The position numbers and the translations under genes were made by a program. Below, piece by piece: positions 9,622-37,302 of a stretch of 64,000 nt of DNA. Position 1 is the first letter of the stretch; every line of letters begins with the position of its first letter. The stretch is from the IMG/VR virus record IMGVR_UViG_3300042868_007959, positions 124,001 to 188,000 of that record. One strand, written 5' to 3'. The notes below the pieces were generated by a model. The model saw only the letters and a list, made by a program, of their open reading frames with translations, was not told where the DNA came from and ran no database searches.

Positions 9622-9653
9622 CAAATGTATAACAAATTTTTGACTATAACAAA
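9622..9653 (-). promoter_or_regulatory. Bacteroidota-type promoter
   Basis: TTTG-20 nt-TACATTTG. Confidence 0.6.
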
Positions 9654-11347: not shown

Positions 11348-12643
11348 TTATATTATAATTTGTACATCGAAAACTACAAAATCATTTTTCTTTTTAACTA
11401 TGTGTCTATCTGTTTTACCCATTGCCAAAACATTTCCAGCTATATCTGTTATCGCCACTTCACTTATTCTAACATCATCATACACTGTTAATGTTTCATT
11501 TTGTGAGTTGTAAAATTCACCTCTTGCTGCGATACAAACAATATTCTGTACTAAATCCTTTTGTATACTATCGATTACTGTATTATATGTGCTAGCACTA
11601 TAATAGTAAAGTCCTAAACCATTATTTATTATATCTGTATCCGTATCACCAATAAAATTAGTTGCAATATTATCAACTATTGTTGGGTTTGTTATTGCAA
11701 AAATACCTTTATCTAAATAAATGACTCCTGCTATTTCATCTGCATTAATGCCTGTTGATGATACTGTTTGGACATTTATTAATTCCTTACCGTTTAAACT
11801 ATATGGTTTAAATGTATCATAACCAGTTGACCAACTTTTAGTATTATCGTTATTAGGTTTTTTAATTTTATCTGATACTAAATATGAAACATTTATTTTT
11901 CTCCCATATATCGATTGCGGATAACTACTTTCATCTATATATTGGTTATCTAATTCAGTTTTTGGTATAGTTGTTCTAGGGAATGTACTATACAATTCAT
12001 ACGTAGTAATTCCTGTTGGTGTTCCACCAACAGTATATCCCGTATATACAGGTAAACTTATTTTTACACTTTTACCATCTATTATTTCACCGTATTGACT
12101 GTTATCAATAATACCCATTAATACTTTAGTAACCCCTAAACCACTAAAAGGTGTATCTGACCACCCACCATTTTGGGATGTGGTGCCTGTGAATATATTA
12201 ACAGTTGCGTCTTTAATTGGTAGAGATAAACTTTTAAAATAGTTTGAGTTTCCATTTGAATTATCGTTTCTATTAATTGATACATATGTTAAATTGGATC
12301 CTGTAACTATTGTTTCACCAATTTCAGAAGTTATTAAATTAACTTTAGAAGAATTAGGTTCTACAATTTTTTTTATAACTGGTGCAACTGTAACAAATAT
12401 TTTACTATATACATCAACATTCGATGATATATTATCATTTGTACTACTATTACTACCTAAATCACCACTATCAGCAGGTACCCTACCAGTAGTTAATTTA
12501 AAATTTGTATTGTAATTGGAATCAGAATCTCCCAAAATAAAGTGAGAGAAAACTGTATTTGTACCAGTTAATAATCTCTGTCTTCCAAGATTAGTTAATC
12601 TAGCCCTTATTGTTACTGTTGTTGCACTATTTATAAATCCCAT
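11348..12643 (-). CDS. Virion protein, tail-collar/fibre-attachment (P2 gpH N-terminal-like) fold with insertion
   Basis: N-terminal ARLTNLGRQRL..FILGDSD; C-terminal ISEVAITDIAGNVLAMGK. Paralog of the next gene. Confidence 0.65.
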   Translation of the reverse strand: MGFINSATTVTIRARLTNLGRQRLLTGTNTVFSHFILGDSDSNYNTNFKLTTGRVPADSGDLGSNSSTNDNISSNVDVYSKIFVTVAPVIKKIVEPNSSKVNLITSEIGETIVTGSNLTYVSINRNDNSNGNSNYFKSLSLPIKDATVNIFTGTTSQNGGWSDTPFSGLGVTKVLMGIIDNSQYGEIIDGKSVKISLPVYTGYTVGGTPTGITTYELYSTFPRTTIPKTELDNQYIDESSYPQSIYGRKINVSYLVSDKIKKPNNDNTKSWSTGYDTFKPYSLNGKELINVQTVSSTGINADEIAGVIYLDKGIFAITNPTIVDNIATNFIGDTDTDIINNGLGLYYYSASTYNTVIDSIQKDLVQNIVCIAARGEFYNSQNETLTVYDDVRISEVAITDIAGNVLAMGKTDRHIVKKKNDFVVFDVQIII

Positions 12644-12653
12644 TTTTTTTTAT

Positions 12654-14897
12654 TTAAAAATCTATTGTTAATTCTATTGAAGCCGTGGTAGAATCAGCCA
12701 ATCTTATTGGTCTCGAAAGTTTACCTACTAAAACTAAGTTTTGGTTATTGTCTAATATCCCTATTTCACTTATGTATCTATCATCACCAAATTCATAAGT
12801 AGGATTACTACTAGATGAAATAGTTGCCCCATCTACGTTTATATTAAATAAAGATTTATAAATGGTTGCACCTATATGTGTTCTAAGGTTACCATAGAAT
12901 AATCTTTCATCACCTAAAGTCATTTTATCATAGTAACTTGCATTTGGCATATCTAGTTCTACCCCTAAATTGAAGTTAGTAGATCCTGTGAATAATGAAC
13001 CTGTCATTATAAATCCAGTGATGTTAGGATTTTGATTTTCAAATAAAAGTGGATTTATTGTTTCCCCACTGTTACCTGTAATATTTGGAGATGTGAAGTC
13101 CATAACTTTCCAATTAGATGGAACTGGTCTAGACTGACTATTTAAATCTACTACTTGTGCAATAACTTTAAATGTATCCGCAAAGAAACCAAAACCATCA
13201 TATAAAACATCTTCTCTTTTTCTCATGTAAGGTAACTCACCTAAATTGTTTATTCTGAATTGTACATCTTTATCCGAACTAGTTGTATTATCTATTACAG
13301 TATATCTTTGAGATGGTAAGAATGGTGTTGTTACAGTTGTTGTACCTGTTGATCCTGTTCCTGTATTTTCTAACCAATAAGTTAAATACATTCTTTCACC
13401 AGATTTAAGGACACCCGTACAGTTACCATTAACTGGTGTGATTAATTCCGCAGCCAAATCAGGTAATGTAAAATTCCTATTTGATGCATAAGACATAGAT
13501 GCAATCAATTCCTCATTATCTATAACTACTATTTGTAATTGTGGGAATACTTTACCAACTGTTAATGGTAGTGTTGGTGATACAGACATACCACTGTACT
13601 CTATTAAATCATAATATTCAATGTCATTATTAGAAGATAATGTTTTCTTTATAGTATCTGAAGTAAATCTCATTCCTAATGTTGTCCCACTTGCAGTTCC
13701 AACATCATTTCTTCTATGCCACATCACTGGTATATCTAAATTTAATAATTTACCTGTCTCACCGTCAATATAGAATTGTTCCCCATAAAAATTGGAGATA
13801 CAACTATTTGAATAATGTATAATAGAGATTGATTTTTTATAAGGATCCATATAACTGATAGATTCGTTAACACCACATATAGATGTACCATCATTTGTAT
13901 CACATACTAAATTTTCATTATACCCTAAATATTGTTTCGTACCTGTATATTGTTCTGAACCAAACAAATTATGTTCGTGATAATTTATTGGTGAGTCTTT
14001 AAATAATCCCGCAGGATTTTCTGTCCAAACATTATTCATATTCCAAACAGGTATATTTTCTACACAAATATCACAACTACTATCAAATGACAGAGTTCCT
14101 GTATTCCAATATGCAGTTAATGAATTTAATCCATAATAATCATCAGTAGGACTATCACCACCAGGTAATGTGTAATATGTAATAATTGTACCCGAATATG
14201 CACTTAATGTAGGTAATGTTCTATCTACTCTTATTGTGGATCCACTTAAATATGTGATATTATATGTTGTATTTATTGTTGCCGCAGTCATTGTGTCACC
14301 AGTGACATTACCCAATGTTGGATTACTAAATCTAAATATTATATAATCGTTAACACTTGTTGCCGTTAGAGGTGTGTCTAAAACTAAAATTCCTTGTGTG
14401 TAAGTTGTTAAATCATACGAACCATCAAACTTACTCAAATCTATTGTTCCGCTTTCTTTTATGAATCTATTTCCTGTTTGAGCAACTAAACCACTGTCTA
14501 CTGTTGATCCAGAAAAGAATCCTCTATCCTCAGCTTCGTTGGTTACAATACCTTTTATTAATTGTATATTACTTTGTTGATTTAAAGGGAAAAGAAACTG
14601 ATTACTTTGGTTCAATAAAAAGGTAGAGAAAAATGGGTTATCGTCTTTTGGTCTCAATACCTTAGAAAATATATTTTTTTGGATATTCCCATCTGCCTCA
14701 ACAAAATAAAATTCTCCTGTTGACGCACCTATAGACGGAACAAATTCTTTCCACCCCTTAACGTAATTGTAATCCACTTCCGAATCCCCAATTACGTAAT
14801 TACTGAAAGTTAATTGTCCTTTAGCTAATTGCTCTCTACCAACATCACTTAATTTTACTCTCACTAATGTTGTACTCTGTTTATTGATATAACTCAT
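12654..14897 (-). CDS. Virion protein, paralogous tail-collar/fibre-attachment fold with large insertion
   Basis: VKLSDVGREQLA..YVIGDSE; ISEIGILDNNQNLVLVGKLSRP. Late motif at 14914-14921. Confidence 0.65.
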   Translation of the reverse strand: MSYINKQSTTLVRVKLSDVGREQLAKGQLTFSNYVIGDSEVDYNYVKGWKEFVPSIGASTGEFYFVEADGNIQKNIFSKVLRPKDDNPFFSTFLLNQSNQFLFPLNQQSNIQLIKGIVTNEAEDRGFFSGSTVDSGLVAQTGNRFIKESGTIDLSKFDGSYDLTTYTQGILVLDTPLTATSVNDYIIFRFSNPTLGNVTGDTMTAATINTTYNITYLSGSTIRVDRTLPTLSAYSGTIITYYTLPGGDSPTDDYYGLNSLTAYWNTGTLSFDSSCDICVENIPVWNMNNVWTENPAGLFKDSPINYHEHNLFGSEQYTGTKQYLGYNENLVCDTNDGTSICGVNESISYMDPYKKSISIIHYSNSCISNFYGEQFYIDGETGKLLNLDIPVMWHRRNDVGTASGTTLGMRFTSDTIKKTLSSNNDIEYYDLIEYSGMSVSPTLPLTVGKVFPQLQIVVIDNEELIASMSYASNRNFTLPDLAAELITPVNGNCTGVLKSGERMYLTYWLENTGTGSTGTTTVTTPFLPSQRYTVIDNTTSSDKDVQFRINNLGELPYMRKREDVLYDGFGFFADTFKVIAQVVDLNSQSRPVPSNWKVMDFTSPNITGNSGETINPLLFENQNPNITGFIMTGSLFTGSTNFNLGVELDMPNASYYDKMTLGDERLFYGNLRTHIGATIYKSLFNINVDGATISSSSNPTYEFGDDRYISEIGILDNNQNLVLVGKLSRPIRLADSTTASIELTIDF

Positions 14898-14936: not shown

Positions 14937-17843
14937 TTAGTATGTATTACCAACATTTGTTAGTACTTCTATCTTATTTGTGTCACTATATTCTACCGTA
15001 TAGATGGTTTCACCTATTATTGGGGTATAAAATTTTTCATTTTTAATTCTATATATAAATTTATCACCAGCAACCGCATTTGTCAATGTTACTAACTTAC
15101 TATATGTTTTTTGTCCTACCACATATTCCACAATTTCACTATATATCACATTCTGATAGTTTATATCTGATGGACTTGTAACTTCAATAGTAAATCTACC
15201 TAAAATTTCGTTAGAAGGTTCACTATTTATTGACCAACTCAATATAGGTGTGTTAGTAGATATTCCACCATTAATCGATGCATTAGGGACATAAAACGCC
15301 TCAATAATATCACCCATTATTAAAGTTTCTTCTAATATAATCCTTCTAGCGTCTGTAGTAGATTTATAATATTCAATATCTTTAGTTAGTATTGCCCCAT
15401 TTAAAGAAAAAACTACGTCTGAAGCAGGTGAACTAACTAAATAAAATTCATATTTTCCTGTTGTCGTATTATAATATACTCTATCGGATGTTAATTGATT
15501 TCCAGTTGTCCCGCTATTAATTAAAGAATTTATAGGATAAACATCTGCGAGTAAATCATTTTTCTTACTATCAACTATAAACGCATAAGTCAATATTTGT
15601 TTATCTAATGGTGTAAATAATAATTTTATGAATTGAGTATTTGCAGTTGTTATTGCACTATACTCAATGTCTTTTGCCAAAACAGAACCATTATAACTAA
15701 CTATCGGATCAGATAATCCATTCACTATATATTCAGTTTGACCTGTTTGAGTGAATTGTGACGATACTGTTAGTGTATTTAATGGTGGTGGTGACGGTGC
15801 AACACTATTATTAAAGATAGGTTTTTCCGCTGCAAAAATATTAATAAAATACCAATCTGTTTCTGGATAATATAAACCATATAAGTTACCTCTTTTATAA
15901 GTGTCTATATTATTTTTTCTCGTCAACTGTTGTTTAGCCAATAAAGTGTTTATATCATAGTTCCAATAAGATTTTATTAAAAATTCACCTTCTCCTATAT
16001 TGAATGTCGGAATAAAAATTGTATTTCCAGTGGTACCCGTTAAATCTTCATATGCCAATGAAAAATTATATAACGCGGAGGTGTTAAATGTTACACTATT
16101 CTGATTATACTTATAAATTTCACCATAATAAGATAATTTATTTGTATCAATAACACCATTAACATCATTTACTAATAAGTCGAATTCAAAACCAGTTCTA
16201 CTTTTAGGTGTAATGTAAACACATCTATCGCAAGATAAAGATTTTGTTGTAACTACATTCGGTAACCCCCAATATGAGGATGTTCCTGTTATAGTAGTAG
16301 ATGTTAGACTTAATGCATCAATTTCAAAATTACATTGTACCCCTAACCCATTTGGTCTATGTATAATATGTAAATTAGTATTGTTAAAATCTGCAACATA
16401 AATTCGTTCATCAGGACCCATTTGCAATGCCCCTAATGTTGACCCACTTATATCTGCAACTGTTATTACATTTTCTACCATATCGGTTGCGGATGTATAT
16501 GTTAAATCAAACTGATGAACTTTTTCACCTGCACCATCCGTAACATAGAACTTTGATGAATCGGATGAAAACTCTAACCCATATGGTCCAACATTGAATG
16601 TCATTCCCGTAATTGTAATTAAATTACTCAAAGTACCCGCAGAAGATTCAAAATCTAAAATATCTATAATATCTTCATCATATAACAAAGATATTAGTTT
16701 TGTTGAGTCAGGTGATGTTTTCATATAACCTCTAGCGGTATTATGTACACTACCAATATTACTTATAATAGGTCCTGTCAATCCAGATGATGATACATTA
16801 AAACTATAATAAGTACTATCTCCACTAGTGTGGGTAATAACCCAATAACTTTCATCATTCATATTATTACACGCAGTAACCTTTTCGGTTATAGGTGAAT
16901 TAATTAACTTAATATTTTTAGTTTCTACTTCACCATCACCATTTTGTAAATCCATATTAACTACGGAATACTCAAACCCATTTGGTGATCCATTGTAGTC
17001 TGTAGTAAAAATAAAGTATTTATTTGATTCAGGTTTTGGTACAATAATTGCCGATTGTGTTGATGTTCCTGAACTTGATAATCCAGTACCGTTTACCATT
17101 ATTGTATTTCCACTAGTATAAACAGTTTCACCATTAGTATAAAATAACAACTCACCTATCTGATTAGATATTGATGATGATCCTTCTTGTGTCACCATAC
17201 CACCACTAAATATAACGGGTTTATTTCCCGTTATAATAGGATTAAAACTAATTCCTACATTTTTTCCGAATAACCAATTATAGTTAATTCTATCATAAGT
17301 ATAACCAGTATAAGTAACTGGTCCACATAAAGTATCCGCAGTTGTCGGAGGTATTTTACGAACACCTCTCATAGTTATTTGAGGGAAATCAAAACTATCA
17401 AAATCTGATCTTTCAATATGCACATATTTTGCGTCATTACTAATATCTAATTCCCAATTATAACTTTCATTTCTACTAGATAATAATTTATATTTTTTAC
17501 CTCCATCTACATAACTTATTTGATTATTTGGGAGTATCGGTTCTAATGATGAACTATCACTACTATTTCCCGATAAAGATAAAATAATAGTTTTTTCAGT
17601 TAACCTATCCCTAAATATAGATTGACCATATTTACCTGGATTAGAAATTAAAAAAATATCGTTTACCATAGTTAAATTAGTCGGTAAAAATAATGCAGAT
17701 TCCGTTTCTAAGAATGGTGACAACGATGCCGCTTGATAAGTTATATCAGTACCCACTCTAATCAATACAGGTGCCTCTATCTCGTTAATTATCTCACCCC
17801 TAGTATTTATAGGATTAATTATTTTACCACTTATTTTTGCCAT
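14937..17843 (-). CDS. Virion protein with Bacteroidota-type beta-propeller and C-terminal phage fibre/baseplate repeats
   Basis: NWLFG, GELLFYTNG, STQSAIIVP, YSVVNM, YWVITH, GYMKTSPD, YGLEFS, GALQMGPD, GLPN; repeats YNGSVLAKDIEY / LNGAILTKDIEY. Confidence 0.75.
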   Translation of the reverse strand: MAKISGKIINPINTRGEIINEIEAPVLIRVGTDITYQAASLSPFLETESALFLPTNLTMVNDIFLISNPGKYGQSIFRDRLTEKTIILSLSGNSSDSSSLEPILPNNQISYVDGGKKYKLLSSRNESYNWELDISNDAKYVHIERSDFDSFDFPQITMRGVRKIPPTTADTLCGPVTYTGYTYDRINYNWLFGKNVGISFNPIITGNKPVIFSGGMVTQEGSSSISNQIGELLFYTNGETVYTSGNTIMVNGTGLSSSGTSTQSAIIVPKPESNKYFIFTTDYNGSPNGFEYSVVNMDLQNGDGEVETKNIKLINSPITEKVTACNNMNDESYWVITHTSGDSTYYSFNVSSSGLTGPIISNIGSVHNTARGYMKTSPDSTKLISLLYDEDIIDILDFESSAGTLSNLITITGMTFNVGPYGLEFSSDSSKFYVTDGAGEKVHQFDLTYTSATDMVENVITVADISGSTLGALQMGPDERIYVADFNNTNLHIIHRPNGLGVQCNFEIDALSLTSTTITGTSSYWGLPNVVTTKSLSCDRCVYITPKSRTGFEFDLLVNDVNGVIDTNKLSYYGEIYKYNQNSVTFNTSALYNFSLAYEDLTGTTGNTIFIPTFNIGEGEFLIKSYWNYDINTLLAKQQLTRKNNIDTYKRGNLYGLYYPETDWYFINIFAAEKPIFNNSVAPSPPPLNTLTVSSQFTQTGQTEYIVNGLSDPIVSYNGSVLAKDIEYSAITTANTQFIKLLFTPLDKQILTYAFIVDSKKNDLLADVYPINSLINSGTTGNQLTSDRVYYNTTTGKYEFYLVSSPASDVVFSLNGAILTKDIEYYKSTTDARRIILEETLIMGDIIEAFYVPNASINGGISTNTPILSWSINSEPSNEILGRFTIEVTSPSDINYQNVIYSEIVEYVVGQKTYSKLVTLTNAVAGDKFIYRIKNEKFYTPIIGETIYTVEYSDTNKIEVLTNVGNTY

Positions 17844-17902: not shown

Positions 17903-20900
17903 TCATTCACAATTGTGAATTAATTCTTGATTATAATAGAATCCTGATATCTGAATCGGTGGAAATGTTTTTATGAATTCTGGTGGATCAAAATCTGGAT
18001 CCCCTATTATTGTAACATTACCCTCATATTCATTAGTATCATATATTTGAGTTATAAATACTGTATTATAATCACTTATTAACGTATTTGTTTTTCTAAC
18101 ACATTTATCATACTTATTTCTAAGTCCAGCAATATAGTTTCGTTGTCTTTCATATGATGTTGTACCAGGTATGAAATTAGATAAATTATTTTGTGCAGTT
18201 ATTAATGATTGTGTTATACCACTACAACTCATAAAATTATTATAGAAATTATTTTGTTGGTTTATATATTCTATCTCTAATTGTGATAATTGTTCAAATA
18301 GAGTACTAAGTTGTGTATTTAACTGTGTTAATGAGTCATTCAATTCCGTTATAGTTTGAGTTACCTCTAAAATACTTTGAGTTAAATTCGGAGTAGTAGT
18401 ATCTTGTAAATTTAAAGAACATAGTCTACCATTATACAATACTATTTGTTGATTTACTATTGCAATTTCAATCTCTTTATTTCTTATATCATTTTTAATT
18501 GATTTTATTTCTTCATTCGTTGGGTATATTGGTTTTTGTTCTACCAAAGAATGTATAGATTCTTGACCCACAATAAAATTAGTCTGTGCACTTAATGGAC
18601 AATCTAATTCCGTATCAATAAAATTTAAACTATATTTTTTATATTTAAATTTATTTTGATCAAATATTGTATTCCTATAAATTTTTCCTGAATTATCACA
18701 ACCTTCCCATATTGTAGTTGCAGGAACTACTTGTTCTAATAAATCCAACCAATAATCACCAACTTTATCCATAAAATCAAACATAGTATCATATGTGAAT
18801 TTACCAGATAAATCTTTACCACAATTACTAGCTCTTAAGTATAATTCATAAAATAATCTAAGTAATGGATAATCACTTATTGTTTGTCTACTTTTGGCAT
18901 CAATTAAGTTACTTAATACCATTTGATCAAATACATCCTTAACCATAATAGTAGATGGATCATAATCTAAAAAGTCTAAAGGGTTAATACAAACTGAATA
19001 TGTATTATTAGTAGTAACTCCCGAAACACATTCTTTCATTTTACCACAATACTCACAATCTCCTTTACAATTTGCACATTCATCAATATCCCTCCAATAA
19101 CATACTTCATTAAGTTCATTCCAACGATAGTTTTTACCTAAACCTAATCCATCTACACCATTATCATTTAATAATTTATTAATAGATAAACAACATTCTT
19201 TTGTGATTTCACTACTTTGATTAAATGTTTGTGCAGTTATCCCCGCACCAATTTGTTGTTCAACACCACCATTATAAAGTGGTGTACCTGAATAAACGTA
19301 TATCTCAAATAAATTAATTGTCCCATCACTATCTTCAACAATAAGACTGAATAAATTATCTAAATTTTTATTATTGTTTAGAACTAAGATGTCGCTATCA
19401 CAACTAGTCCCATCAATATAGAATTTAGAAAGTGATTCACCTTTATTTAGTAAATCATAATAGTTTGAATTTAATGATTCAGAATAATTCGCAGTTAAAG
19501 TGTAATATTCATTTTTAAGTTCTATTACTTGATTTTGTAATATATTAGTGAATGTTTCACAACTAAATGGAATGACACTAGATGTGGATGCACCTAAATC
19601 AATAGTATAATTCGTAAGTGTATTATTAATATTTAATACCCCATTAAAATTAATGTATGTTGCTATTTGATCCTGAAAAATATATTCTTCACTACCCATA
19701 AACAAATAATCTTCGTCAGATTGGAAAATATAGTTATCTGTATTACAATCGGTTGGACAATTATCACAATCTATTCTTTTCCAAAAATTAAATACATCAC
19801 ACTCTATAGATTTTGCAGGATCAATACTAAATGATGTGTTTTTAACGTTTAAAATTAAATCAGAATGGTAGACATCATAATTAGTATATCTATATTCTAA
19901 ATCAAGCCATAATCTTTCCTCTGGATTGGTAATTCTTACTATTTCATAGTTATTAGTTGATCCTGTATTACATTCACCATTAGGGTAGATAGTTTCTTTT
20001 ACTACACCACCGTCATAATATACCCAAGATTTTTTATTATCGATAACACAATTTAATTGTGGTATTAAACAATCATTAATAGATAGTATCCTATTTGTTT
20101 TACAATCAGAAACATTTACCATTATATTATCTACCAATAGACAAAGATTACATTCGTAATTCTGAATCTCTATACTAAAGAAAAAGTCCTTATTAGGGTA
20201 TAATCTTCTTAAATCATCGCAAACACATTCAGGTATTGTGAAATTAAATGTTTTCCAATCTGGTTCAAATAAATCCGAATTATAACTTATTCCTTGAGAA
20301 GACAGTTGGTTGAATATTGACTCCTCAATTTGAGCCATCAATTGTTCATCACCTTCTATAAAAATTCCACTGTATCCTTCATTAGGATTAAATTCCCATA
20401 TTGGGTTTACTGACTGCGTATACGGTAAATAAGTTAATGAAGTATCAATATTATTCTGAACGTCAATATTATTATTATCTACAAACAATTTAAAATTAAT
20501 TTTTAAGTCGTCTATGTAATTTAAATAATTATTATTGTTTGATTCTTCGTATACATTATATTTTTTTATTAATGACTCATACCATTTATTATAACAAATA
20601 TAAGTTTGTTCTTCTACATATAATAACGAATTTTGTATACTATCTAATAATTGGTTTAGTTCTTTTATTTTACCACTTCTATTTAATTCAATAATGAAAG
20701 GACAACATTGTACATCATATGTAGTTGTTGTGGAAGATTCACTACCAATAACTCTAGGATTAAGAATACATTCTTTATTTACATAACTTACATCTAAATT
20801 TAATGTGGCTTTATTACAACAATTCTGTGGGATATTTTTCCCATTTGTTAATACCACATAATTAGGTGTAATCGTTAAACTATTACTAGTTATTCCCAAA

Positions 20901-23900
20901 CATTCTTTACTATTTACTGATATTGCATCTGTAGGTAATTTTGGGTTGGTTATTGCATCCGCAGACTGCAGATTATCTGCAGGTAATTTAGGCAAATCCA
21001 ATATAACATTGGTAGATATACCAACAACTGGTTTCGACATTAATGGGCTTAACTCAACAGTTCTAAATGCATTTTGTTTAAATTCTGTACCTACTTTTAC
21101 AAAAGTTTGGTTTTTAAGATTTTGAGTAAATAAATCAGTTTTTTGTTCTCTTTCAGTTATTAATCCCGATATTTGAGACTGGTTCTTAGTTAATTCAACA
21201 TTTAATTTAACTTTTTGTGAATCAGTTAACTGTAAGTTACCACTATTATCTGTAATACTTTTAGTACTTACAGATAAAATATCTGCAGTTTTATTAATCG
21301 TATTTTGAGTATCATTCTGTAATAACTGAGATTTTTGTGCCGATTCATCATAACTTATAAAGTTATTTACATCGGTAGTTAATGTGTTAATTGTATTACT
21401 TAAATCCTGAATTTGTTTTTCTAATTCAGTTATTAATACAGTATTATTATCAAATTTTGCTTTAACTAATTGATCCGTTAATTGCGTTTTTAAAACACAA
21501 GATTCAAATAACTGAGAATAAACTATTATTTGATCCTGATTTTCTTTTGTTTTAGATGATACACAATTACTATACTCTTTAGTTTTTGTACCATCATTTA
21601 TAGAATCCCCATATATTATAGTATTACAATATGAAACATAATCAAAGTTTTTAAGTTCTTTAATAGTATTTTCATAAACACTACAATCTAAATTAGTGTT
21701 AACATTAGTTAATGCTTTTTCTATTATAACATTACTTTCTTGTTTTTCCGCAATTTCATTATTTATTTCTAATATACTATTTTTTAGTATTGTTTCATTA
21801 ATAGTGTAATTATCTAACTGAACATTTTTTTGTGTTGTTAATGAATTATATACCTTTATGTCTTCAATTATTTCTAATTGTGGTTTAGTTGCATATCTTT
21901 TAAATGTATCTGTAGGTAATTTTGGGGTTATTACATCTGCAGGTAATTTTGGGTTGGATATTACATCTGCAGGTAATTTTGGGTTGGATATTACATCTGT
22001 AGTTACGTTGACTTGTGAATTCTTCAAACAAGGTTCTAAATTACGGTTTATTAATTCAATTAACTCGCTTATTTCAGAAGATAATTGTTCATAATCACCG
22101 TATAATTTACTCCATAACCCACATTCTAGTGGAATCTGTAATGAACATACATTTTGTGTCGTAATATATTTTTCATATTTTATTTCACAAGCCCCAACAT
22201 TAAAATTAAATACGAAACAACTTGTTGGTAAATTAGAAACAATAGTTAATAATTTATTTTTAATTTCATCGTATTTTTTTATTTCTCCCAATATAGGTGT
22301 ATAATCAAAATTTAAAGATGAAAGTGTTTGACTATTTTGAGATAGAATATCATTATAAGTTTGTGTAATATTATTAACCCATGATTGGTTAGTGCCTGAC
22401 CATTGCGTAAATGATACCACATTACCATCTACTGCCCTACAACAATCTGTATTAGGTTCTAAAATATTACTATTTTGCCATATTACATACTCATCAGTTA
22501 GATTTTCAGAGTCATTGAAGTTAGATTGTAAATTTTGTGATTCTTCGTCACTATTAGTAAACGCAACAAAATTTAAACACTTTATATTATTAATTGTATT
22601 ATCATAAATAAAAGCTGGAAAACAACTTATATTGTCCGCACATTTTATAAGATTATCTGCAGTATATTTTAACATATAATCAAATGAAAAGTCTATAGTA
22701 CAACTACAATCATCTAATTGTGGTAGTTTAAATCCTTTCCATTTTTCACTAGCGAAAACAACCGCAACGCTATTAAAGTCACCACAACCAATTCTAGAAG
22801 GATCGACTGCCGCAATTATTATAGAATTAGGATTGGTACTGTATTGATTGTCCCCATTGTACGGTATTAAAATATTATTGTCATAGTCAAATGTGAATTG
22901 TCCGAATTGATACCCGTAATAATTTGCTACGTCCCCATATAAATCACTTAATAAGTCAGTACTATACCAATCTAATATAAAATTATTATTATATATTGAT
23001 GGTGTAAAACTAACTCTTCCATATTCATCAATAGACTCAACCTTCCAGTTTGATGGATTCATAAGTGATGGATCCTCTAAAATGGAGTTTGGTTGCGGAG
23101 ATAATGATGTTGATCCCTCAACTACACCTTTTACTATTCTGGACTCATTAAAACAATCCCAAAAAATTTCAGTGGAGTAATACTCATATATAGAACCTAT
23201 AGGATTTTGTAAATCATAGTAACTATTATTAACTGAAAAATCTATAATCGGTAATGTGTAATTTGCATCTGGTGTAGTTAATTCAGTAGCACTATTCTCA
23301 TTATTTTTTTTACATACAATAAATTTATTACCATTTTGTTCCAATATTTGGTAATCGTAACCATACCAAGCACAACATTCAGGACTACTGATTATAGATG
23401 TTTTTTTACAATTAACCTCAGTAAAAAATTTATTACATGATATTATAGGTGAGTCCTTTTTAAAAGTATCAGATAATCTTTTTTTACCACAATAGTTATT
23501 GATAAAAGTTTTTGGTTCCCCATATTTAATAATGAAATCTGATAAAGAAATTTGTGTATTACTATATTGGTAACATTTACCCCCTATCTGATAAGTACCC
23601 AATTGAGGTGTCGTATTATTAGTCATAGTAAACTCTATCACACCATTAGGTAATGTTCCTGAAGGTGTACCGACACAAGGTGCCAATTTAGAACAATATT
23701 CCGTTTGTCTACCGTATTCATTTACATATGAAATATAATTAGCGTCTTGTGTTTTACAACAAGCTGGGAATTCATCAAAAGAAACTTTAATACCATCACT
23801 ATTAGTATAATAGATAAATGGACTACAATCTTCTAAATTTAAATTATCACAACTATATTCTACTACATTTTTTGGTTTTTCTGATAAACATATTTCTAAT

Positions 23901-26173
23901 GTTTTGTTAATATCACAATTTTCTGTAGATATTTCATTTAAACAATTTTTTAAAGATAATTCATAATTATTTTTTATTGTTTGCCACTCAGGAGAATAAA
24001 TTAAATAACCGTCTTTTTCAATTAACAATAAGTATTGGTTATAATTCGCTTCTGCTTCATTAAATGCTTGTTGTAATGTAGTCTTACCATCATTCTGTAA
24101 TGGTGTCTCAATAATACTATAATCGACATCTATACAATCCTCTATCGGTTGATACCCATTTGTTGTAGGGTTAAACGTTAACTGAGTAGTAAATATATCT
24201 GAATTATTACTAATTCCATTAAAAATACCATAATTATAATTTATAAAATAATTTTCTACTATAGTTGTAGCAGTTAGTGTTACAGTTGGTTGGTTATCAA
24301 AATTAGGTATATAACACCTACTAAAATATTGTAAGTATTCGTTACCACCATCGTATTTACCAACGTGAGGGTTATTACCCCTTAAAACTGAAACTACATT
24401 TGATCCGTAAGTTTCTCTATACCATCCGCCCGCTTTTTGAAAGTACATTTCTGTAAAATCATTTTCTACTAATTCTCCTGTTTGAGGATCAATAAAATTG
24501 GTAATTACGACATCACCATTTACAGGTGGTAATGGGAATCCTTCATCGTCATATGGTATACCTTCTAAATTAACTTCACCAGTATAAAGGTATAAAAGTT
24601 TTTTTATCTCCTCTATATCCAAAGGCTTATCAAGTATTACTATATATTCATTAAAATTAACTAATGATTCTGGTGCCCCTATAAATCTAAATAAAAATTC
24701 TACCGCTTTTCTTGTACCCTTACTTTTCCAAAGCCAAGCTATGTTTAAAATTAATCTTCTATATAATTCAATATCTATTTCTGATTGAGTTAGGTTTGTT
24801 GATGTCCCACTAAATGAACCCGAACCATTACTAGGTAAAAATAATTTACTAAAAGATGCGTCATCTATAAAATTAATTGGTTCTATACCTAACATATATG
24901 CCAAATCTTTAACTAAAGTATCAGGTACATTGTTTTTCTTATCGTAAGTTACTACATGAGCAAATTTGATTGCATTAATATATTTTTTAACATAATCGAA
25001 TTCCACCCCATAAATTCTAAGTAATTTAGTTGCTTTTTCACCATTTAATACTATATCTGCTCCATCTGCTCTAGGTATCGTATCAAAACTAGATATTGCT
25101 TCAGTCGTATACTTTCTTACAATGGTATCAGTTTTTGTCCCATCTAAACCTTCACCTAATTTATTTAATTCATCAATATAAGCAATATAAAAACTATCAA
25201 AAAAGTTTAAATTATAACCATCCTCTAAGATTGGAAATGTTAAAACTGATTTAGATGTTAATAAAACCCCATCATCAGTATAATTTGTACTTATAATTTC
25301 CGATTTATATTTAGGGTATAAGTTTTTATTTAAAATATTACTTTGAAAATCATTTAAACTAGTAAAGAACTTTTGATTCTCACTTTCATTTGGTTTAATG
25401 AAATACGGTATGGATGCAGTAACATTATTAAATAAAAAAGAAAGTTGTGGTATAAAAATACCAGTCAACTCAGGAAATGGATTACCTTCCACTATCAATT
25501 CTAAAACTGAATTTGTTTTTTGTGGAGATGGTGTAATACTTTTAATTTTTTTAATAATACCATTATGTTCTATTACATATGAACCATAGTTTACAGTAAA
25601 ATTTCTTAATGGATTAGTTATATCTGTATCCGAAATATATTGAGCATCTAAAGTATACTTTATTGCGTATGGGTTAACAAAGAAATTACTATTAACTGAA
25701 AAAGTGGATTCATCTGCTTCTATATCGTAAACATAATCAGTGATGTTATTTCCCGTAACACTACCTACTTTAGTATCAACATATATCGCAGCTGGCCATT
25801 TCTCTTGAATATCCAATAAAGAAGCTCTTATCAATTCTTTTGCGGATCCATACCAAACATAACTTAATGGATTTGATAAATCTAAATTTAATTTAGTTTT
25901 AACATTTTTTTGTATATCTAACTGTGTCGTTCCTGATGCGGCAATATCATCTAAAGTATAAAATCTAGATTTAGTACCTTGTTTAAATAAAACATCTGGT
26001 TTTGGATCTAAATTTACTGATATAGAGAAATTACCATTTGTGAATAGCGTAGTTCCTCCATCACTAGTAAGTTGAAACCCTACTAAATCAGGACTAAAAT
26101 CCCTATATTCAATGTTATCATTGAAAAATATTCTTTGGGCATATCCTGCGACTTTTATTTTTTTATTTGCCAT
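17903..26173 (-). CDS. Giant (2756 aa) baseplate-associated virion protein with gpI/gp7-like motif, Cys-rich modules and coiled coils
   Basis: LYRRLILNIAWLWKSKGTRKAVEFLFRFIG, repeated CC modules, long N/Q/K-rich heptad regions. Confidence 0.7.
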   Translation of the reverse strand: MANKKIKVAGYAQRIFFNDNIEYRDFSPDLVGFQLTSDGGTTLFTNGNFSISVNLDPKPDVLFKQGTKSRFYTLDDIAASGTTQLDIQKNVKTKLNLDLSNPLSYVWYGSAKELIRASLLDIQEKWPAAIYVDTKVGSVTGNNITDYVYDIEADESTFSVNSNFFVNPYAIKYTLDAQYISDTDITNPLRNFTVNYGSYVIEHNGIIKKIKSITPSPQKTNSVLELIVEGNPFPELTGIFIPQLSFLFNNVTASIPYFIKPNESENQKFFTSLNDFQSNILNKNLYPKYKSEIISTNYTDDGVLLTSKSVLTFPILEDGYNLNFFDSFYIAYIDELNKLGEGLDGTKTDTIVRKYTTEAISSFDTIPRADGADIVLNGEKATKLLRIYGVEFDYVKKYINAIKFAHVVTYDKKNNVPDTLVKDLAYMLGIEPINFIDDASFSKLFLPSNGSGSFSGTSTNLTQSEIDIELYRRLILNIAWLWKSKGTRKAVEFLFRFIGAPESLVNFNEYIVILDKPLDIEEIKKLLYLYTGEVNLEGIPYDDEGFPLPPVNGDVVITNFIDPQTGELVENDFTEMYFQKAGGWYRETYGSNVVSVLRGNNPHVGKYDGGNEYLQYFSRCYIPNFDNQPTVTLTATTIVENYFINYNYGIFNGISNNSDIFTTQLTFNPTTNGYQPIEDCIDVDYSIIETPLQNDGKTTLQQAFNEAEANYNQYLLLIEKDGYLIYSPEWQTIKNNYELSLKNCLNEISTENCDINKTLEICLSEKPKNVVEYSCDNLNLEDCSPFIYYTNSDGIKVSFDEFPACCKTQDANYISYVNEYGRQTEYCSKLAPCVGTPSGTLPNGVIEFTMTNNTTPQLGTYQIGGKCYQYSNTQISLSDFIIKYGEPKTFINNYCGKKRLSDTFKKDSPIISCNKFFTEVNCKKTSIISSPECCAWYGYDYQILEQNGNKFIVCKKNNENSATELTTPDANYTLPIIDFSVNNSYYDLQNPIGSIYEYYSTEIFWDCFNESRIVKGVVEGSTSLSPQPNSILEDPSLMNPSNWKVESIDEYGRVSFTPSIYNNNFILDWYSTDLLSDLYGDVANYYGYQFGQFTFDYDNNILIPYNGDNQYSTNPNSIIIAAVDPSRIGCGDFNSVAVVFASEKWKGFKLPQLDDCSCTIDFSFDYMLKYTADNLIKCADNISCFPAFIYDNTINNIKCLNFVAFTNSDEESQNLQSNFNDSENLTDEYVIWQNSNILEPNTDCCRAVDGNVVSFTQWSGTNQSWVNNITQTYNDILSQNSQTLSSLNFDYTPILGEIKKYDEIKNKLLTIVSNLPTSCFVFNFNVGACEIKYEKYITTQNVCSLQIPLECGLWSKLYGDYEQLSSEISELIELINRNLEPCLKNSQVNVTTDVISNPKLPADVISNPKLPADVITPKLPTDTFKRYATKPQLEIIEDIKVYNSLTTQKNVQLDNYTINETILKNSILEINNEIAEKQESNVIIEKALTNVNTNLDCSVYENTIKELKNFDYVSYCNTIIYGDSINDGTKTKEYSNCVSSKTKENQDQIIVYSQLFESCVLKTQLTDQLVKAKFDNNTVLITELEKQIQDLSNTINTLTTDVNNFISYDESAQKSQLLQNDTQNTINKTADILSVSTKSITDNSGNLQLTDSQKVKLNVELTKNQSQISGLITEREQKTDLFTQNLKNQTFVKVGTEFKQNAFRTVELSPLMSKPVVGISTNVILDLPKLPADNLQSADAITNPKLPTDAISVNSKECLGITSNSLTITPNYVVLTNGKNIPQNCCNKATLNLDVSYVNKECILNPRVIGSESSTTTTYDVQCCPFIIELNRSGKIKELNQLLDSIQNSLLYVEEQTYICYNKWYESLIKKYNVYEESNNNNYLNYIDDLKINFKLFVDNNNIDVQNNIDTSLTYLPYTQSVNPIWEFNPNEGYSGIFIEGDEQLMAQIEESIFNQLSSQGISYNSDLFEPDWKTFNFTIPECVCDDLRRLYPNKDFFFSIEIQNYECNLCLLVDNIMVNVSDCKTNRILSINDCLIPQLNCVIDNKKSWVYYDGGVVKETIYPNGECNTGSTNNYEIVRITNPEERLWLDLEYRYTNYDVYHSDLILNVKNTSFSIDPAKSIECDVFNFWKRIDCDNCPTDCNTDNYIFQSDEDYLFMGSEEYIFQDQIATYINFNGVLNINNTLTNYTIDLGASTSSVIPFSCETFTNILQNQVIELKNEYYTLTANYSESLNSNYYDLLNKGESLSKFYIDGTSCDSDILVLNNNKNLDNLFSLIVEDSDGTINLFEIYVYSGTPLYNGGVEQQIGAGITAQTFNQSSEITKECCLSINKLLNDNGVDGLGLGKNYRWNELNEVCYWRDIDECANCKGDCEYCGKMKECVSGVTTNNTYSVCINPLDFLDYDPSTIMVKDVFDQMVLSNLIDAKSRQTISDYPLLRLFYELYLRASNCGKDLSGKFTYDTMFDFMDKVGDYWLDLLEQVVPATTIWEGCDNSGKIYRNTIFDQNKFKYKKYSLNFIDTELDCPLSAQTNFIVGQESIHSLVEQKPIYPTNEEIKSIKNDIRNKEIEIAIVNQQIVLYNGRLCSLNLQDTTTPNLTQSILEVTQTITELNDSLTQLNTQLSTLFEQLSQLEIEYINQQNNFYNNFMSCSGITQSLITAQNNLSNFIPGTTSYERQRNYIAGLRNKYDKCVRKTNTLISDYNTVFITQIYDTNEYEGNVTIIGDPDFDPPEFIKTFPPIQISGFYYNQELIHNCE
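20921..21000 (-). repeat. Second cluster of PKLP[AT]D-coding repeats
   Basis: 20927-20949 matches 21935-21957 at 22 of 23 nt. Encodes LPKLPAD...NPKLPTD. Confidence 0.8.
21908..21999 (-). repeat. Coding tandem repeat, 30-nt unit (DVISNPKLPA)
   Basis: ttacatctgcaggtaattttgggttggata at 21931-21960 and 21961-21990, plus partial flanking copies. Confidence 0.92.
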
Positions 26174-35470: not shown

Positions 35471-37300
35471 CTATGATGTAGAAATAGTGACTTTTATATC
35501 TTTATTTGGGAATTTTACCTCAAACATCGCATTAGGTGCACCAAATAATGTATACCTACCTAATAGATCTATCTGTCTAGTTGTATCATCAATATATGGT
35601 TGAGCTATCTCATTTAAAGAATATTTACCATTTTCATTAACTTTATTAAATACTCTAAGATCGGTAACATTTAAAACTCCCGCCACATTATTTATATTCT
35701 CTACTAATTGAGATATGTAGATATTATCACCCATATCCCATTTGTTGATATCAAAATATTGTGTAACTGATGAGATAACACCTGATATAACTTCTCCTTT
35801 TGGAGTTGCCTTATCTGCAAAAATATCTATCTCAAAACCTAAATTAATTACCCTACCATTTTTAACAGTGACGTAATCATTTATCATTCTATAATCCGCC
35901 AAATATTCTGCAATATTTTGTTTTAGGGTTGAGGTTGACTCAGTAGTTAATTTACTAGCCGAATCTAATGCCAATATATAAACATTAATTTTATTTCTTT
36001 CCTCCCATACACCTGTTCTAAATGGAACACCAAATTTACCAGGCATTAGTGGAACTCTACTTTGGTAATCTTTTATAGTTACACATCTATCTTGTGCAGA
36101 AAAATTATACTTAACTAAATTTCTTATTTCTTCAACTGATGGTTCTTCTTTACCCCCTAATGCAGGAATTGGGTTATTAACACTAATACTATTTTTTACA
36201 ATTCTATTAATGTTACTGTCATCACCATTTATGATACTACTAACAGTACCTAAAGTAGTAATAGTATTTGGACCAATATTCGAATCTTGTCCACCACCTA
36301 TTCTATATCTAACATATAGTGTGTTATTTGTTTGTGGTATCGCACCTAATGATAAATTATTAACTACTCTACCTATTCTATCTATTTGTCCTCTACAACC
36401 GATGAATTCATTTAATTCTGAAATATCTGAATCACCTGCACCAAATGTTATTTTACAAAAACCATTATCAGTAAATTCTTTAATAAATCTTTGCGGTGCA
36501 TTCTTCCATTTACCTACAACAACTCCTTCTCTATCAGAAACAGTATTCTCATCTTCTATATAAATCTCTGCCTGTGCCAATGCAGGTACCTCAAACCAAT
36601 TATAGTTGAAATTGGAAAAGTCTGCTTCCGTTGGGTTGTTAATAAAATTAGTACCTTCTTTAGTTATTATGTTTTCTATCGATAATACATTATCTTCAGG
36701 TAATATAATCTCTAAAAATGGTCTGTAATCTTCTCTACTTAATGTTTTTTTAAATATCTTTGTGAAACCATTTAACATGATTTCCCTTTTTGTAAGAGAG
36801 TAGTTTTGAATTATCCCACTACCATCTATATTAGGTATTATTAATCTATTAGGTATACCTCCTGTCGTAAATGGAGATGAGAAATCACAATCTTCTATTA
36901 ATTCAAATACCTTTCCAGCACCAGTTGCCTGTGAACCTTTAAGTATTTTAGGTGCATAACTTATGTCAAATGTATCACCATTTACAGGAATATTAGTCAC
37001 AGTCCAATCCACAATCGTAATACTTGGTCGTTTACCTGGTATATTTAAACCAAAAGTTCTTGCCAATTCTAAAACTGATGATCTTTCTTGTGCATAACTT
37101 ATTTGTGTCTCATTAAACATCCTATCAGTGTGGAATGATAACATATCACCTACTGCAGCGTTTAATTCTAATAACATCATACCTACAGAGGCATCGTTAA
37201 AATCTGAAAAAATCTCAGGATAATACTTCTGTATAAATTCAATAAGTTGTAATCTCACATCTGTGAAGTTACGTGCATTATAATCTATTTTTTTTGCCAT
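35471..37300 (-). CDS. Baseplate wedge protein (T4 gp6 / baseplate J-like)
   Basis: DFNDASVGMMLLELNAAVGD, FGAG, YRIGGG..SN, GGKEEPSVEEIR, AQDRCVTIKDY. Confidence 0.9.
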   Translation of the reverse strand: MAKKIDYNARNFTDVRLQLIEFIQKYYPEIFSDFNDASVGMMLLELNAAVGDMLSFHTDRMFNETQISYAQERSSVLELARTFGLNIPGKRPSITIVDWTVTNIPVNGDTFDISYAPKILKGSQATGAGKVFELIEDCDFSSPFTTGGIPNRLIIPNIDGSGIIQNYSLTKREIMLNGFTKIFKKTLSREDYRPFLEIILPEDNVLSIENIITKEGTNFINNPTEADFSNFNYNWFEVPALAQAEIYIEDENTVSDREGVVVGKWKNAPQRFIKEFTDNGFCKITFGAGDSDISELNEFIGCRGQIDRIGRVVNNLSLGAIPQTNNTLYVRYRIGGGQDSNIGPNTITTLGTVSSIINGDDSNINRIVKNSISVNNPIPALGGKEEPSVEEIRNLVKYNFSAQDRCVTIKDYQSRVPLMPGKFGVPFRTGVWEERNKINVYILALDSASKLTTESTSTLKQNIAEYLADYRMINDYVTVKNGRVINLGFEIDIFADKATPKGEVISGVISSVTQYFDINKWDMGDNIYISQLVENINNVAGVLNVTDLRVFNKVNENGKYSLNEIAQPYIDDTTRQIDLLGRYTLFGAPNAMFEVKFPNKDIKVTISTS

Positions 37301-37302
37301 AT

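What the first reader, a model, noticed from the sequence alone, without database searches (positions are those of the whole stretch)
16250..17285. Bacteroidota surface-protein beta-propeller captured into a phage tail protein
Seen: ordered motifs NWLFG, EG..SIS..G.LLFYT.G, M.NG.GL, STQSAIIVP.P, YSVV.M....G.G.V, EK.TA, YWVITH, GYMK.SPD, YGLEFS, GALQ.GPD.RIY, GLPN. Known (from recall): this series typifies the N-terminal propeller of T9SS-secreted PKD/gliding-motility-CTD proteins. No signal peptide or T9SS CTD is evident here, and it is fused to phage fibre repeats. Inference: a host adhesin domain reused as a receptor-binding or mimicry module.
Basis: partly seen in the sequence, partly recalled or inferred. 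Interest (0 to 1): 0.62.

Follow-up and report, generated by a model that had tools for sequence, protein, structure and literature searches.

The report
Host surface propeller in phage tail-module protein
A large lake-water phage carries, inside a 968-residue protein of its baseplate/tail-fibre gene block, a seven-bladed beta-propeller clearly related to the one at the tip of many Bacteroidota secreted surface proteins; this is a clean but not unprecedented case of a phage borrowing a bacterial surface domain, probably for binding.

Summary
All eleven motifs occur in order in ORF 14937..17843 (-), 968 aa, at residues 189-529; one spacing is off by one.

- **Homology.** Residues 180-535 match 12,806 protein clusters. 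Apart from the phage's own kin, hits are 40-45% identical at E about 1e-60. In them the domain starts about residue 25, after a signal-peptide-like stretch. Fifty Type IX secretion C-terminal sorting domain (T9SS CTD) hits occur among 60 scanned: 28 CHU_C and 22 Por_Secre_tail. Thirty-five carry PKD. Named sources are Bacteroidota plus one Ignavibacteria.
- **Fold.** AlphaFold gives a confident beta-propeller, probably seven-bladed (pLDDT 91.7).
- **Phage protein.** It has no signal peptide and no CTD.
- **Phage setting.** The window lies in a 254-kb lake-water virus record. The gene is third from the end of a same-strand block that starts with gp25-like and gp6-like baseplate genes. That position is kept in 18 related viral contigs.
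- **Origin.** Phage copies form one clade (support 100) inside the cellular radiation, which suggests one old capture.
- **Constraint.** The propeller is the most conserved part of the protein among the phage's relatives.

Still inferred: virion location, a binding role, and a Bacteroidota host. "Phage fibre repeats" is only partly right. There are two tandem beta-sandwich repeats, but they match no known family. Verdict: a new member of a known kind, of moderate interest.

The parts
14937..17843 (-). Whole gene, 968 aa (P0001). It is a three-part protein: N-terminal region, propeller, C-terminal beta-sandwich modules.
   Evidence: The gaps to the neighbouring same-strand genes are 59 nt and 39 nt. 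More than 120 clusters of 70-95% identical full-length kin exist in metagenomes.
17307..17843 (-). N-terminal region, residues 1-179. It is phage-specific, has no signal peptide and is modelled with low confidence. It is the presumed attachment part.
   Evidence: pLDDT is mostly below 50. There is no Pfam hit above cut-off. A 75-86 aa Cys-rich insert follows residue 98 in many relatives. A homotrimer test gave no verdict.
16239..17306 (-). Beta-propeller, probably seven-bladed, residues 180-535. It is homologous to the N-terminal propeller of Bacteroidota T9SS cargo proteins.
   Evidence: The HMM envelope is 180-535. The AF2 model has pLDDT 91.7 and pTM 0.92. VIA Z is 23.9 to 1l0q, and other seven-bladed propellers score Z 19-23. 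TM is 0.89-0.92 to Bacteroidota CHU_C / Por_Secre_tail / PKD clusters. Forty-seven family-wide conserved positions are kept.
14937..16238 (-). C-terminal region, residues 536-968 plus the stop codon. It consists of several beta-sandwich modules found only in this phage lineage.
   Evidence: The AF2 model is all-beta with pLDDT 70-90. The 178 homologues found (120 listed) appear to be the same phage family. There are no Pfam or PHROG hits. The nearest Atlas cluster is viral, at score 0.89, which is a lead only.
15564..15773 (-). Tandem repeat copy 1, residues about 691-760.
   Evidence: Local alignment to copy 2 scores 75 (BLOSUM62), z = 10 against 200 shuffles.
15264..15479 (-). Tandem repeat copy 2, residues about 789-860.
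17903..26173 (-). Upstream neighbour, a 2756-aa ORF without known domains, always next to the propeller gene.
   Evidence: The order is kept in L010 and L012-L028.
11348..14897 (-). Two downstream ORFs (747 aa and 431 aa) that share their first 45 residues or so. They are likely further fibre-like proteins and mark the end of the structural block.
   Evidence: 40% identity, E 1e-6. The order is kept in related contigs.
35471..37686 (-). gp6-like (609 aa) and gp25-like (127 aa) baseplate wedge genes at the head of the same-strand block.
   Evidence: PHROG 219 scores 1.9e-20 and PHROG 261 scores 6e-21. The gp6-like protein is 27% identical over its full length to the Flavobacterium phage immuto baseplate wedge protein.

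Best explanation
An ancestor of this lineage of large lake-water myovirus-like phages took up, once, the propeller domain that Bacteroidota (and at least one Ignavibacteria) place at the N-terminal tip of many T9SS-secreted, PKD-containing surface proteins. The propeller is probably seven-bladed. The signal peptide and the T9SS sorting domain were not kept.

The propeller now sits between a phage-specific N-terminal part and phage-specific C-terminal beta-sandwich modules. The N-terminal part is presumed to fix the protein to the baseplate or tail. The gene lies in the fibre/spike end of the baseplate gene block.

Most likely the protein is a virion appendage, and the propeller serves as a ligand-binding module. 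It would recognise a conserved ligand, such as a cell-surface or extracellular glycan or protein of a Bacteroidota host.

Shown: homology, fold, loss of secretion signals, phage context, a conserved position, a single phage clade, and strong conservation of the propeller. Inferred: virion location, a binding role, the nature of the ligand, the host phylum, and the direction of transfer.
For: **Homology.** 12,806 clusters reach E<=1e-3 and 4,581 reach E<=1e-30. Typical cellular hits are 40-45% identical with the domain at residues about 25-365. Of 60 such hits, 28 carry CHU_C, 22 Por_Secre_tail, 35 PKD_4 and 3 SprB repeats. TIGR04131 and TIGR04183 are confirmed on single proteins. One hit is named 'PKD domain-containing protein [Cytophagaceae bacterium]'. 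Named genome loci come from Flavobacterium, Chitinophaga, Flavipsychrobacter, Bacteroidales, Saprospiraceae and one Ignavibacteria. The profile hits 58 of 301 genomes sampled across the phylum of Chitinophaga, often in several copies.

**Fold.**

**Phage context.** The window lies in a virus record of 253,879 bp. It holds baseplate, RNR, DnaB, UvsX and SSB genes. Gene order matches the fibre/spike region of Flavobacterium phage immuto. The same position is kept in L010 and in 17 IMG/VR contigs.

**Single capture.** The 13 phage rows form one clade with SH-aLRT 100 and a stem of 0.62. That clade lies inside a starred group of 82 rows that excludes 15 cellular rows. GC of the region (0.30) is like the rest of the phage.

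**Constraint.** All 47 family-wide conserved positions are kept. Mean pairwise identity within the phage family is 71% for the propeller, against 53-57% for the other parts.

**Modularity typical of adhesins and fibres.** Relatives carry inserts, some with weak PA14-like signals.

**Host hints.** Shine-Dalgarno-like motifs are depleted, 9 of 302 upstream regions against 30 of 302 control sites. TAnnTTTG occurs 27 times in sense and 15 in antisense upstream of genes, mostly 12-38 nt before the start codon. No sigma-70 -35/-10 pairs were found in the sense orientation upstream of genes.
Against: - No known tail-fibre, spike or receptor-binding family matches any part of the protein or its neighbours. 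Virion location therefore rests on gene order alone.
- The trimer test of the N-terminal part gave no verdict.
- The propeller is the least variable part of the protein, whereas receptor-binding tips are usually the most variable. The specificity-determining part may be the C-terminal modules instead.
- No member of the cellular propeller family has a tested function in anything I found, so 'adhesin' is by association (T9SS cargo, PKD, SprB repeats, lectin domains).
- The host is not identified. The best cultured-phage match of the baseplate protein is a Microcystis phage at 29% identity, just ahead of Flavobacterium phages.
- The tree is unrooted, so the direction of transfer rests on breadth and on nesting under a midpoint root.
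Confidence: 0.6

Rival explanations
1. The propeller does not recognise the host cell. It binds the same environmental polymer or particle surface that the bacterial surface proteins bind. This would keep virions where Bacteroidota hosts feed, as proposed for Ig-like and BACON domains on other phages.
For: The propeller is strongly conserved in the phage lineage while the rest of the protein diverges. All family-conserved positions are retained, as expected if the ligand is the same as for the bacterial proteins. The cellular relatives are outward-facing tips of secreted proteins, some with lectin domains. Some phage relatives add a weak PA14-like insert.
Against: No ligand is known for any member. 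The position among fibre/spike-like genes fits host recognition equally well. Nothing distinguishes the two readings computationally.
Confidence: 0.2
2. The propeller is an enzyme, for example a lactonase-like or polysaccharide-degrading activity. It would act as a tail-spike depolymerase rather than a simple binder.
For: There are weak sub-threshold hits to SGL (E 0.011), and to Lactonase PF10282 in 6 of 60 cellular relatives. Structural neighbours include putative 6-phosphogluconolactonases and a muconate-lactonizing enzyme, Z 21-23. Conserved polar residues recur through the domain: E220, Q263, E320, H338, Q444, Q474, D478.
Against: The same Z range (19-24) is reached by WD40, YVTN and lectin propellers, so the match is to the fold and not to an active site. 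All Pfam hits are below their cut-offs. No catalytic motif was identified.
Confidence: 0.1
3. The protein is not part of the virion. It acts inside or outside the infected cell as a mimic or decoy of host T9SS cargo, for example by titrating a partner of the host's propeller proteins.
For: There is no homology to any known structural family.
Against: The gene sits inside a tightly packed same-strand block that starts with baseplate genes and ends before the replication genes. It keeps that place in 18 related contigs. Its size and multi-domain beta-rich build resemble appendage proteins. Without a signal peptide it cannot reach the periplasm or cell surface before lysis.
Confidence: 0.06
4. 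The transfer went the other way: the propeller arose in phages and was passed to Bacteroidota.
For: The tree is unrooted, and phage and cellular rows are separated by one branch.
Against: Thousands of cellular clusters match the domain. Hits occur in 19% of sampled Bacteroidota genomes, with several paralogues and tandem copies. Against this stands a single phage lineage, with no hit in 50,697 GenBank phage records. Divergent cellular members (L008, L009) fall outside a supported group that contains the phage clade.
Confidence: 0.03

Closest known systems
N-terminal propeller of Bacteroidota T9SS cargo proteins (PKD plus CHU_C / TIGR04131 or Por_Secre_tail / TIGR04183 architectures), e.g. MFN3404867.1 'PKD domain-containing protein [Cytophagaceae bacterium]'
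   Same: Clear sequence homology: 40-45% identity, E about 1e-60, and 47 shared conserved positions. The predicted fold is the same, TM 0.89-0.92.
   Different: The phage protein has no signal peptide, no PKD domain and no T9SS CTD. Its propeller is internal (residues 180-535) rather than N-terminal. It is flanked by phage-only sequence. The usual Cys at position 222 is replaced by a Cys at 325. The propeller itself has no model in the Pfam and NCBIfam copies used here.
YVTN beta-propeller plus PKD of an archaeal surface-layer protein (PDB 1L0Q)
   Same: It is the best structural match (Z 23.9, 276 residues aligned, rmsd 3.4). It is likewise a propeller followed by PKD in a cell-surface protein, as in the bacterial relatives.
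   Different: Sequence identity is only 14%. Other seven-bladed propellers score almost as well, so this is a shared fold and not shown kinship.
Host-like binding domains displayed on phage particles: Ig-like domains of T4 Hoc, BACON domains of crAss-like phages, and propeller platforms in staphylococcal phage receptor-binding proteins (from my own knowledge, not tested here)
   Same: The principle is the same: a domain family typical of bacterial surface or secreted proteins is built into a phage structural or appendage protein, presumably for adhesion.
   Different: The domain family is different. No GenBank phage record holds this propeller at tblastn E<=1e-3. Virion display is not yet shown here.
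Fibre/spike gene block of Flavobacterium phage vB_FspM_immuto (MW353176.1)
   Same: The gene order is alike: gp25-like, gp6-like, a small ORF, an ORF of about 1300 aa, several mid-size ORFs, then fibre/spike genes.
   Different: Only the two baseplate proteins are detectably similar, at 21-27% identity. None of immuto's fibre or spike proteins matches P0001.

Membership tests
T9SS cargo (substrate) protein | C-terminal T9SS sorting domain (Por_Secre_tail PF18962 / TIGR04183 or CHU_C PF13585 / TIGR04131) | tested here: not met
   No such hit in P0001 even at E<=1. The same scans find these domains in 50 of 60 cellular relatives.
T9SS cargo (substrate) protein | N-terminal Sec signal peptide | tested here: not met
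   The strongest 12-residue hydrophobic window in the first 35 aa holds 7 hydrophobic residues in P0001 and 6-7 in nine phage kin. In 48 of 60 cellular relatives it holds 9 or more. This is a heuristic, not a dedicated predictor.
Bacteroidota T9SS-cargo N-terminal propeller domain family (no Pfam or NCBIfam model in the copies used) | Significant full-length sequence match to the domain, with the family's conserved positions | tested here: met
   Cellular members score E 1e-57 to 1e-72 over residues about 10-355 of the 366-residue query. Forty-seven positions conserved in at least 85% of both phage and cellular rows are shared.
Seven-bladed beta-propeller fold | Closed all-beta propeller of about 28 strands that matches solved seven-bladed propellers over the whole domain | tested here: met
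   The AF2 model has pLDDT 91.7, pTM 0.92 and 29 strands. VIA Z is 19-24 over 255-305 residues to YVTN, lactonase-type and WD40 propellers. Foldseek probability is 1.00. The blade count is inferred from these matches and was not counted on coordinates.
Phage tail fibre / receptor-binding protein | Gene located in the baseplate/tail-fibre module | tested here: met
   It is the tenth listed ORF (100 aa or more) of the same-strand block that starts with the gp25-like and gp6-like genes, and the third from its end. The order parallels phage immuto. The position is kept in 18 related contigs.
Phage tail fibre / receptor-binding protein | Homology to a described fibre, spike or receptor-binding family | tested here: not met
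   No PHROG, Pfam or NCBIfam hit. No PDB sequence hit. No tblastn hit in 50,697 phage records. BFVD gives only generic beta-rich matches.
Phage tail fibre / receptor-binding protein | Presence in the virion and oligomeric (usually trimeric) assembly | tested here: inconclusive
   The homotrimer test of residues 1-190 gave no verdict. Virion presence cannot be tested with these tools.

The most novel reading that the evidence does not exclude
The phage propeller still recognises the same partner as the host's own T9SS-delivered propeller proteins. That partner could be the host's propeller-bearing surface proteins themselves, through like-with-like binding, or a polymer those proteins hold. The phage would then dock by imitating the tip of its host's surface proteins. 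This would make a very large, uncharacterised Bacteroidota surface-domain family experimentally tractable through a phage.
Probability: 0.15. Interest if true: 0.7.

Novelty: new member of a known kind. Interest (0 to 1): 0.45.

Why it matters
- It links a widespread lineage of large lake phages to a very large family of Bacteroidota surface-protein propellers. The gene's sequence is held at half or more of its sampled words in 22 lake-metagenome runs. The propeller family spans thousands of clusters and has no model in the Pfam and NCBIfam copies used here.
- The phage copy is a compact version free of secretion signals and under strong constraint. It could be expressed to find the ligand of the whole family.
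- It adds weak evidence that this phage lineage infects Bacteroidota.
- It is one more documented case of phage appendage proteins being built from host surface domains.

Tried and rejected
- **Family scans of P0001 and neighbours.** Pfam, PHROG and NCBIfam gave nothing above cut-off. The weak hits (SGL, Inp1, Tektin) are treated as noise.
- **PDB sequence searches.** P0001 and three neighbours gave nothing meaningful.
- **GenBank phages.** tblastn against 50,697 records found no match with either the phage-type or a cellular-type propeller.
- **The search for related loci with alignments A2 and A3.** A single cellular protein was used instead.
- **The genome search with a taxon name as centre.** I solved it through a genome handle.
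- **Full-length model against BFVD.** Only generic beta-rich multi-domain matches came back.
- **Homotrimer prediction of residues 1-190.** It gave no verdict, which is neither support nor evidence against.
- **Moraphage link.** I considered whether the phage is a 'moraphage' (PMC12619734, large aquatic phages with predicted Bacteroidota hosts). No HSP70/DnaK was found in the 78%-complete record and there is no other test, so this is left open.
- **Organism names for phage homologues in NCBI assemblies.** None are on record.
- **Literature searches.** I found no paper on this propeller or on FIDD. A lake metaHi-C preprint gave no usable host link.
- Read laying was not used; the two RNA runs hold only 5-7% of the words.
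Full report
**1. The observation**

The finding lies in one ORF, 14937..17843 on the minus strand, 968 aa. A regex scan found ten of the eleven motifs exactly as written, in the stated order, between residues 189 and 529 (window 16257-17279). The eleventh, EG..SIS..G.LLFYT.G, is present but has three residues rather than two between SIS and G. The N-terminus has no hydrophobic signal-like stretch. Pfam and NCBIfam find no T9SS sorting domain, even at E<=1.

**2. What the window is**

- The window is bases 124,001-188,000 of a 253,879-bp virus record, judged 78% complete. GC is 29% and the record holds 28 tRNA genes.
- PHROG scans identify gp6-like and gp25-like baseplate wedge proteins at 35471-37686. 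They also identify ribonucleotide reductase, a DnaB-like helicase, an exonuclease, a UvsX-like recombinase and an SSB.
- The gene's sequence is held, at half or more of its sampled words, in 22 lake-water metagenome runs, each from a different study (two may be the source sample).
- The nearest cultured relatives of the baseplate protein are distant, at 27-29% identity: Microcystis phage Mel-JY01 and Flavobacterium phage immuto.

**3. Where the gene sits**

- On the minus strand the block runs: gp25-like, gp6-like, 144 aa, 1366 aa, 671, 296, 291, 300, 2756 aa, then the 968-aa protein, 747 aa and 431 aa. Replication-type genes follow.
- Phage immuto has a parallel order that ends in annotated tail fibre and tail spike genes. 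Only the two baseplate proteins are detectably similar between the two phages.
- The order giant ORF, propeller protein, 747 aa, 431 aa, 210 aa, 316 aa is kept in a 186-kb JGI contig (L010) and in all 17 IMG/VR contigs fetched. Protein identity there is 49-99%.
- The 747-aa and 431-aa proteins share their first 45 residues or so, as alternative fibres often do.
- 'Tail protein' is therefore supported by position only. No described fibre, spike or receptor-binding family matches.

**4. The propeller and its relatives**

- *Close kin.* The word-based search returned only close, unnamed full-length kin, so I ran the exhaustive search with residues 180-545.
- *Exhaustive search.* It gave 12,806 clusters at E<=1e-3 and 4,581 at E<=1e-30. 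After a handful of phage-type proteins, the list consists of proteins of 400-3,000 aa in which the domain occupies residues about 25-365, at 40-45% identity.
- *Domains of the cellular hits.* Of 60 such proteins, 35 carry PKD_4, 28 CHU_C, 22 Por_Secre_tail, 8 Ig_7, 3 SprB repeats, 3 legume-lectin domains and 3 OmpA. NCBIfam confirms T9SS type A or type B sorting domains on single proteins. Forty-eight of the 60 have a signal-peptide-like N-terminus.
- *Tandem copies.* Some cellular proteins carry two or three propellers in tandem.
- *Named sources.* These are a Cytophagaceae MAG, and Flavobacterium, Chitinophaga dinghuensis, Flavipsychrobacter, Bacteroidales, Saprospiraceae and one Ignavibacteria.
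- *Spread in the phylum.* A profile of the domain hits 58 of 301 genomes sampled across the phylum of Chitinophaga, often in several copies.
- *No curated model.* The propeller itself has no model in the Pfam and NCBIfam copies used. There are only sub-threshold Lactonase, SGL and PD40 hits.

**5. Fold**

- With a 46-row alignment, AlphaFold2 models residues 180-545 at pLDDT 91.7 and pTM 0.92, as an all-beta domain of 29 strands.
- Foldseek and VIA-align match it over its whole length to seven-bladed propellers. The best is the YVTN propeller of an archaeal S-layer protein that is also followed by PKD (1l0q, Z 23.9). Next are lactonase-type propellers (4qrj, 3hfq) and WD40 proteins, at Z 19-23. 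This identifies the fold, not a function.
- Against ESM Atlas models, TM is 0.89-0.92 to Bacteroidota clusters with CHU_C, Por_Secre_tail, PKD and FIDD.

**6. The rest of the protein**

- In the full-length model the N-terminal 187 residues are of low confidence. Residues about 545-965 form several beta-sandwich modules at pLDDT 70-90.
- Residues about 691-760 and 789-860 are a tandem repeat, z = 10 against shuffles.
- The C-terminal 423 residues find 178 homologues. The 120 listed appear to be the same phage family.
There are repeats, and they are phage-specific, but they belong to no described fibre family.
- Relatives carry inserts: 75-86 Cys-rich residues after residue 98, about 260-277 residues after residue 490-513 with weak PA14-like signals (E 0.04-0.1, below cut-off), and 379 residues after residue 602. 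Such modularity is usual in adhesins and fibres.

**7. Origin**

- I built a tree of 97 propeller domains: 13 phage-type, 76 cellular from the search, and 8 from named genomes. The method was IQ-TREE quick with LG+C20.
- Phage-type rows were subsampled at 78% identity. Of the cellular rows, all domains from the highest-ranked proteins (ids up to P0144) and every third of the rest were kept. Truncated proteins were left out.
- All phage rows fall in one clade with SH-aLRT 100 and a stem of 0.62. That clade lies inside a starred group of 82 rows that excludes 15 cellular rows. The two most divergent cellular rows sit at the midpoint root.
- The tree is unrooted. The direction cell to phage rests on three things: this nesting, the very large cellular breadth, and the restriction to one phage lineage. 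No hit occurs in 50,697 GenBank phage records with either a phage-type or a cellular-type query.
- Identity to any cellular member is at most about 43%, and the region's GC equals the phage's. The capture is therefore old and has since been inherited vertically.

**8. Constraint**

- All 47 positions conserved across the family are kept in the phage clade. The only consistent change is P to S at position 427.
- The common cellular Cys at 222 is mostly absent in phages, which have a near-invariant Cys at 325. Cys504 is kept in both.
- Within the phage family the propeller is the most conserved part: 71% mean pairwise identity, against 53-57% for the N- and C-terminal parts.
- This points to a conserved ligand or a structural role rather than a fast-evolving strain-specific receptor tip. 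The C-terminal modules may carry strain specificity.

**9. Host**

The host is not identified. Three hints point to Bacteroidota.
- Shine-Dalgarno-like motifs are depleted upstream of genes: 9 of 302, against 30 of 302 at control sites.
- The Bacteroidota-type -7 element TAnnTTTG is enriched in sense orientation upstream of genes, 27 against 15, and 22 of the 27 lie 12-38 nt before the start codon. The paired form TTTG-N17-21-TAnnTTTG occurs at 0.62 per kb in intergenic DNA on the main coding strand, against 0.05 per kb in genes. No sigma-70 -35/-10 pairs were found in the sense orientation upstream of genes.
- The propeller family is itself mainly from Bacteroidota.

These hints are suggestive only. 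Cyanobacteria also use few Shine-Dalgarno sites.

**10. Mechanism and verdict**

- *Most likely (confidence about 0.6).* The protein is a virion appendage of the baseplate/fibre set. Its N-terminal part anchors it, and its captured propeller binds a conserved ligand on or around a Bacteroidota host.
- *Rivals.* These are adhesion to environmental polymers rather than to the cell (0.2), an enzymatic spike (0.1), a non-virion decoy (0.06), and transfer from phage to bacteria (0.03).
- *Family membership.* The protein is not a T9SS substrate, because both defining signals were tested and not met. It is a member of the propeller domain family and has the seven-bladed propeller fold.
- *Novelty.* Host surface domains on phage appendages are a known phenomenon. 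This particular domain has not turned up in any deposited phage genome searched here. I rate it a new member of a known kind, of moderate interest.

Noticed in passing
window 11348-12643 (-) and 12654-14897 (-): The 431-aa and 747-aa ORFs just downstream of the propeller gene share their first 45 residues or so (40% identity, E 1e-6) and nothing else. This looks like a common N-terminal adaptor on two different fibre-like proteins.
   Followed up: partly
relatives of P0001: P0127, P0102, P0108, P0116, P0094, P0077 (L010:10001-13663 for P0127): The family has length variants. One insert of 75-86 Cys-rich residues follows residue 98. One of about 260-277 residues follows residue 490-513 and gives weak PA14 hits (E 0.04-0.1, below cut-off). 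One of 379 residues follows residue 602.
   Followed up: partly
window 16239-17306 (-), residues 222, 325, 504: The Cys pattern differs. Cellular propellers have Cys at 222 (51%) and 504 (81%). Phage propellers have Cys at 325 (92%) and 504 (85%). This may be a relocated disulfide; distances could not be measured.
   Followed up: no
cellular proteins P0122, P0123, P0126, P0128, P0130 and others: The bacterial propeller family is very large (12,806 clusters at E<=1e-3). It has no model in the Pfam and NCBIfam copies used. It occurs in two or three tandem copies in some T9SS cargo proteins.
   Followed up: partly
G000:C1:75643-94417 (outside the window): The record has 28 tRNA genes in two clusters. 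One is called by ARAGORN with a four-base anticodon 'taca' and no amino-acid assignment.
   Followed up: no
whole record G000 (the window included): Shine-Dalgarno-like motifs are depleted upstream of genes (9 of 302). The Bacteroidota-type TAnnTTTG element is enriched 12-38 nt before start codons. No sigma-70 -35/-10 pairs were found in the sense orientation upstream of genes. About 81% of genes lie on the minus strand.
   Followed up: partly
window 17903-26173 (-), 30878-34978 (-), 49624-55314 (-), 55653-59258 (-): Four very large ORFs (2756, 1366, 1896 and 1201 aa) have no PHROG hit. The two that were also scanned against Pfam and the PDB gave nothing meaningful. The 2756-aa protein varies most among related contigs, at 27-99% identity.
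   Followed up: no
window 10695-11327 (-) and 9644-10594 (-): The structural block ends here. The 210-aa and 316-aa ORFs that follow are conserved in all related contigs. The 316-aa one has a faint DnaG N-terminal hit on record for its homologue in L010.
   Followed up: no
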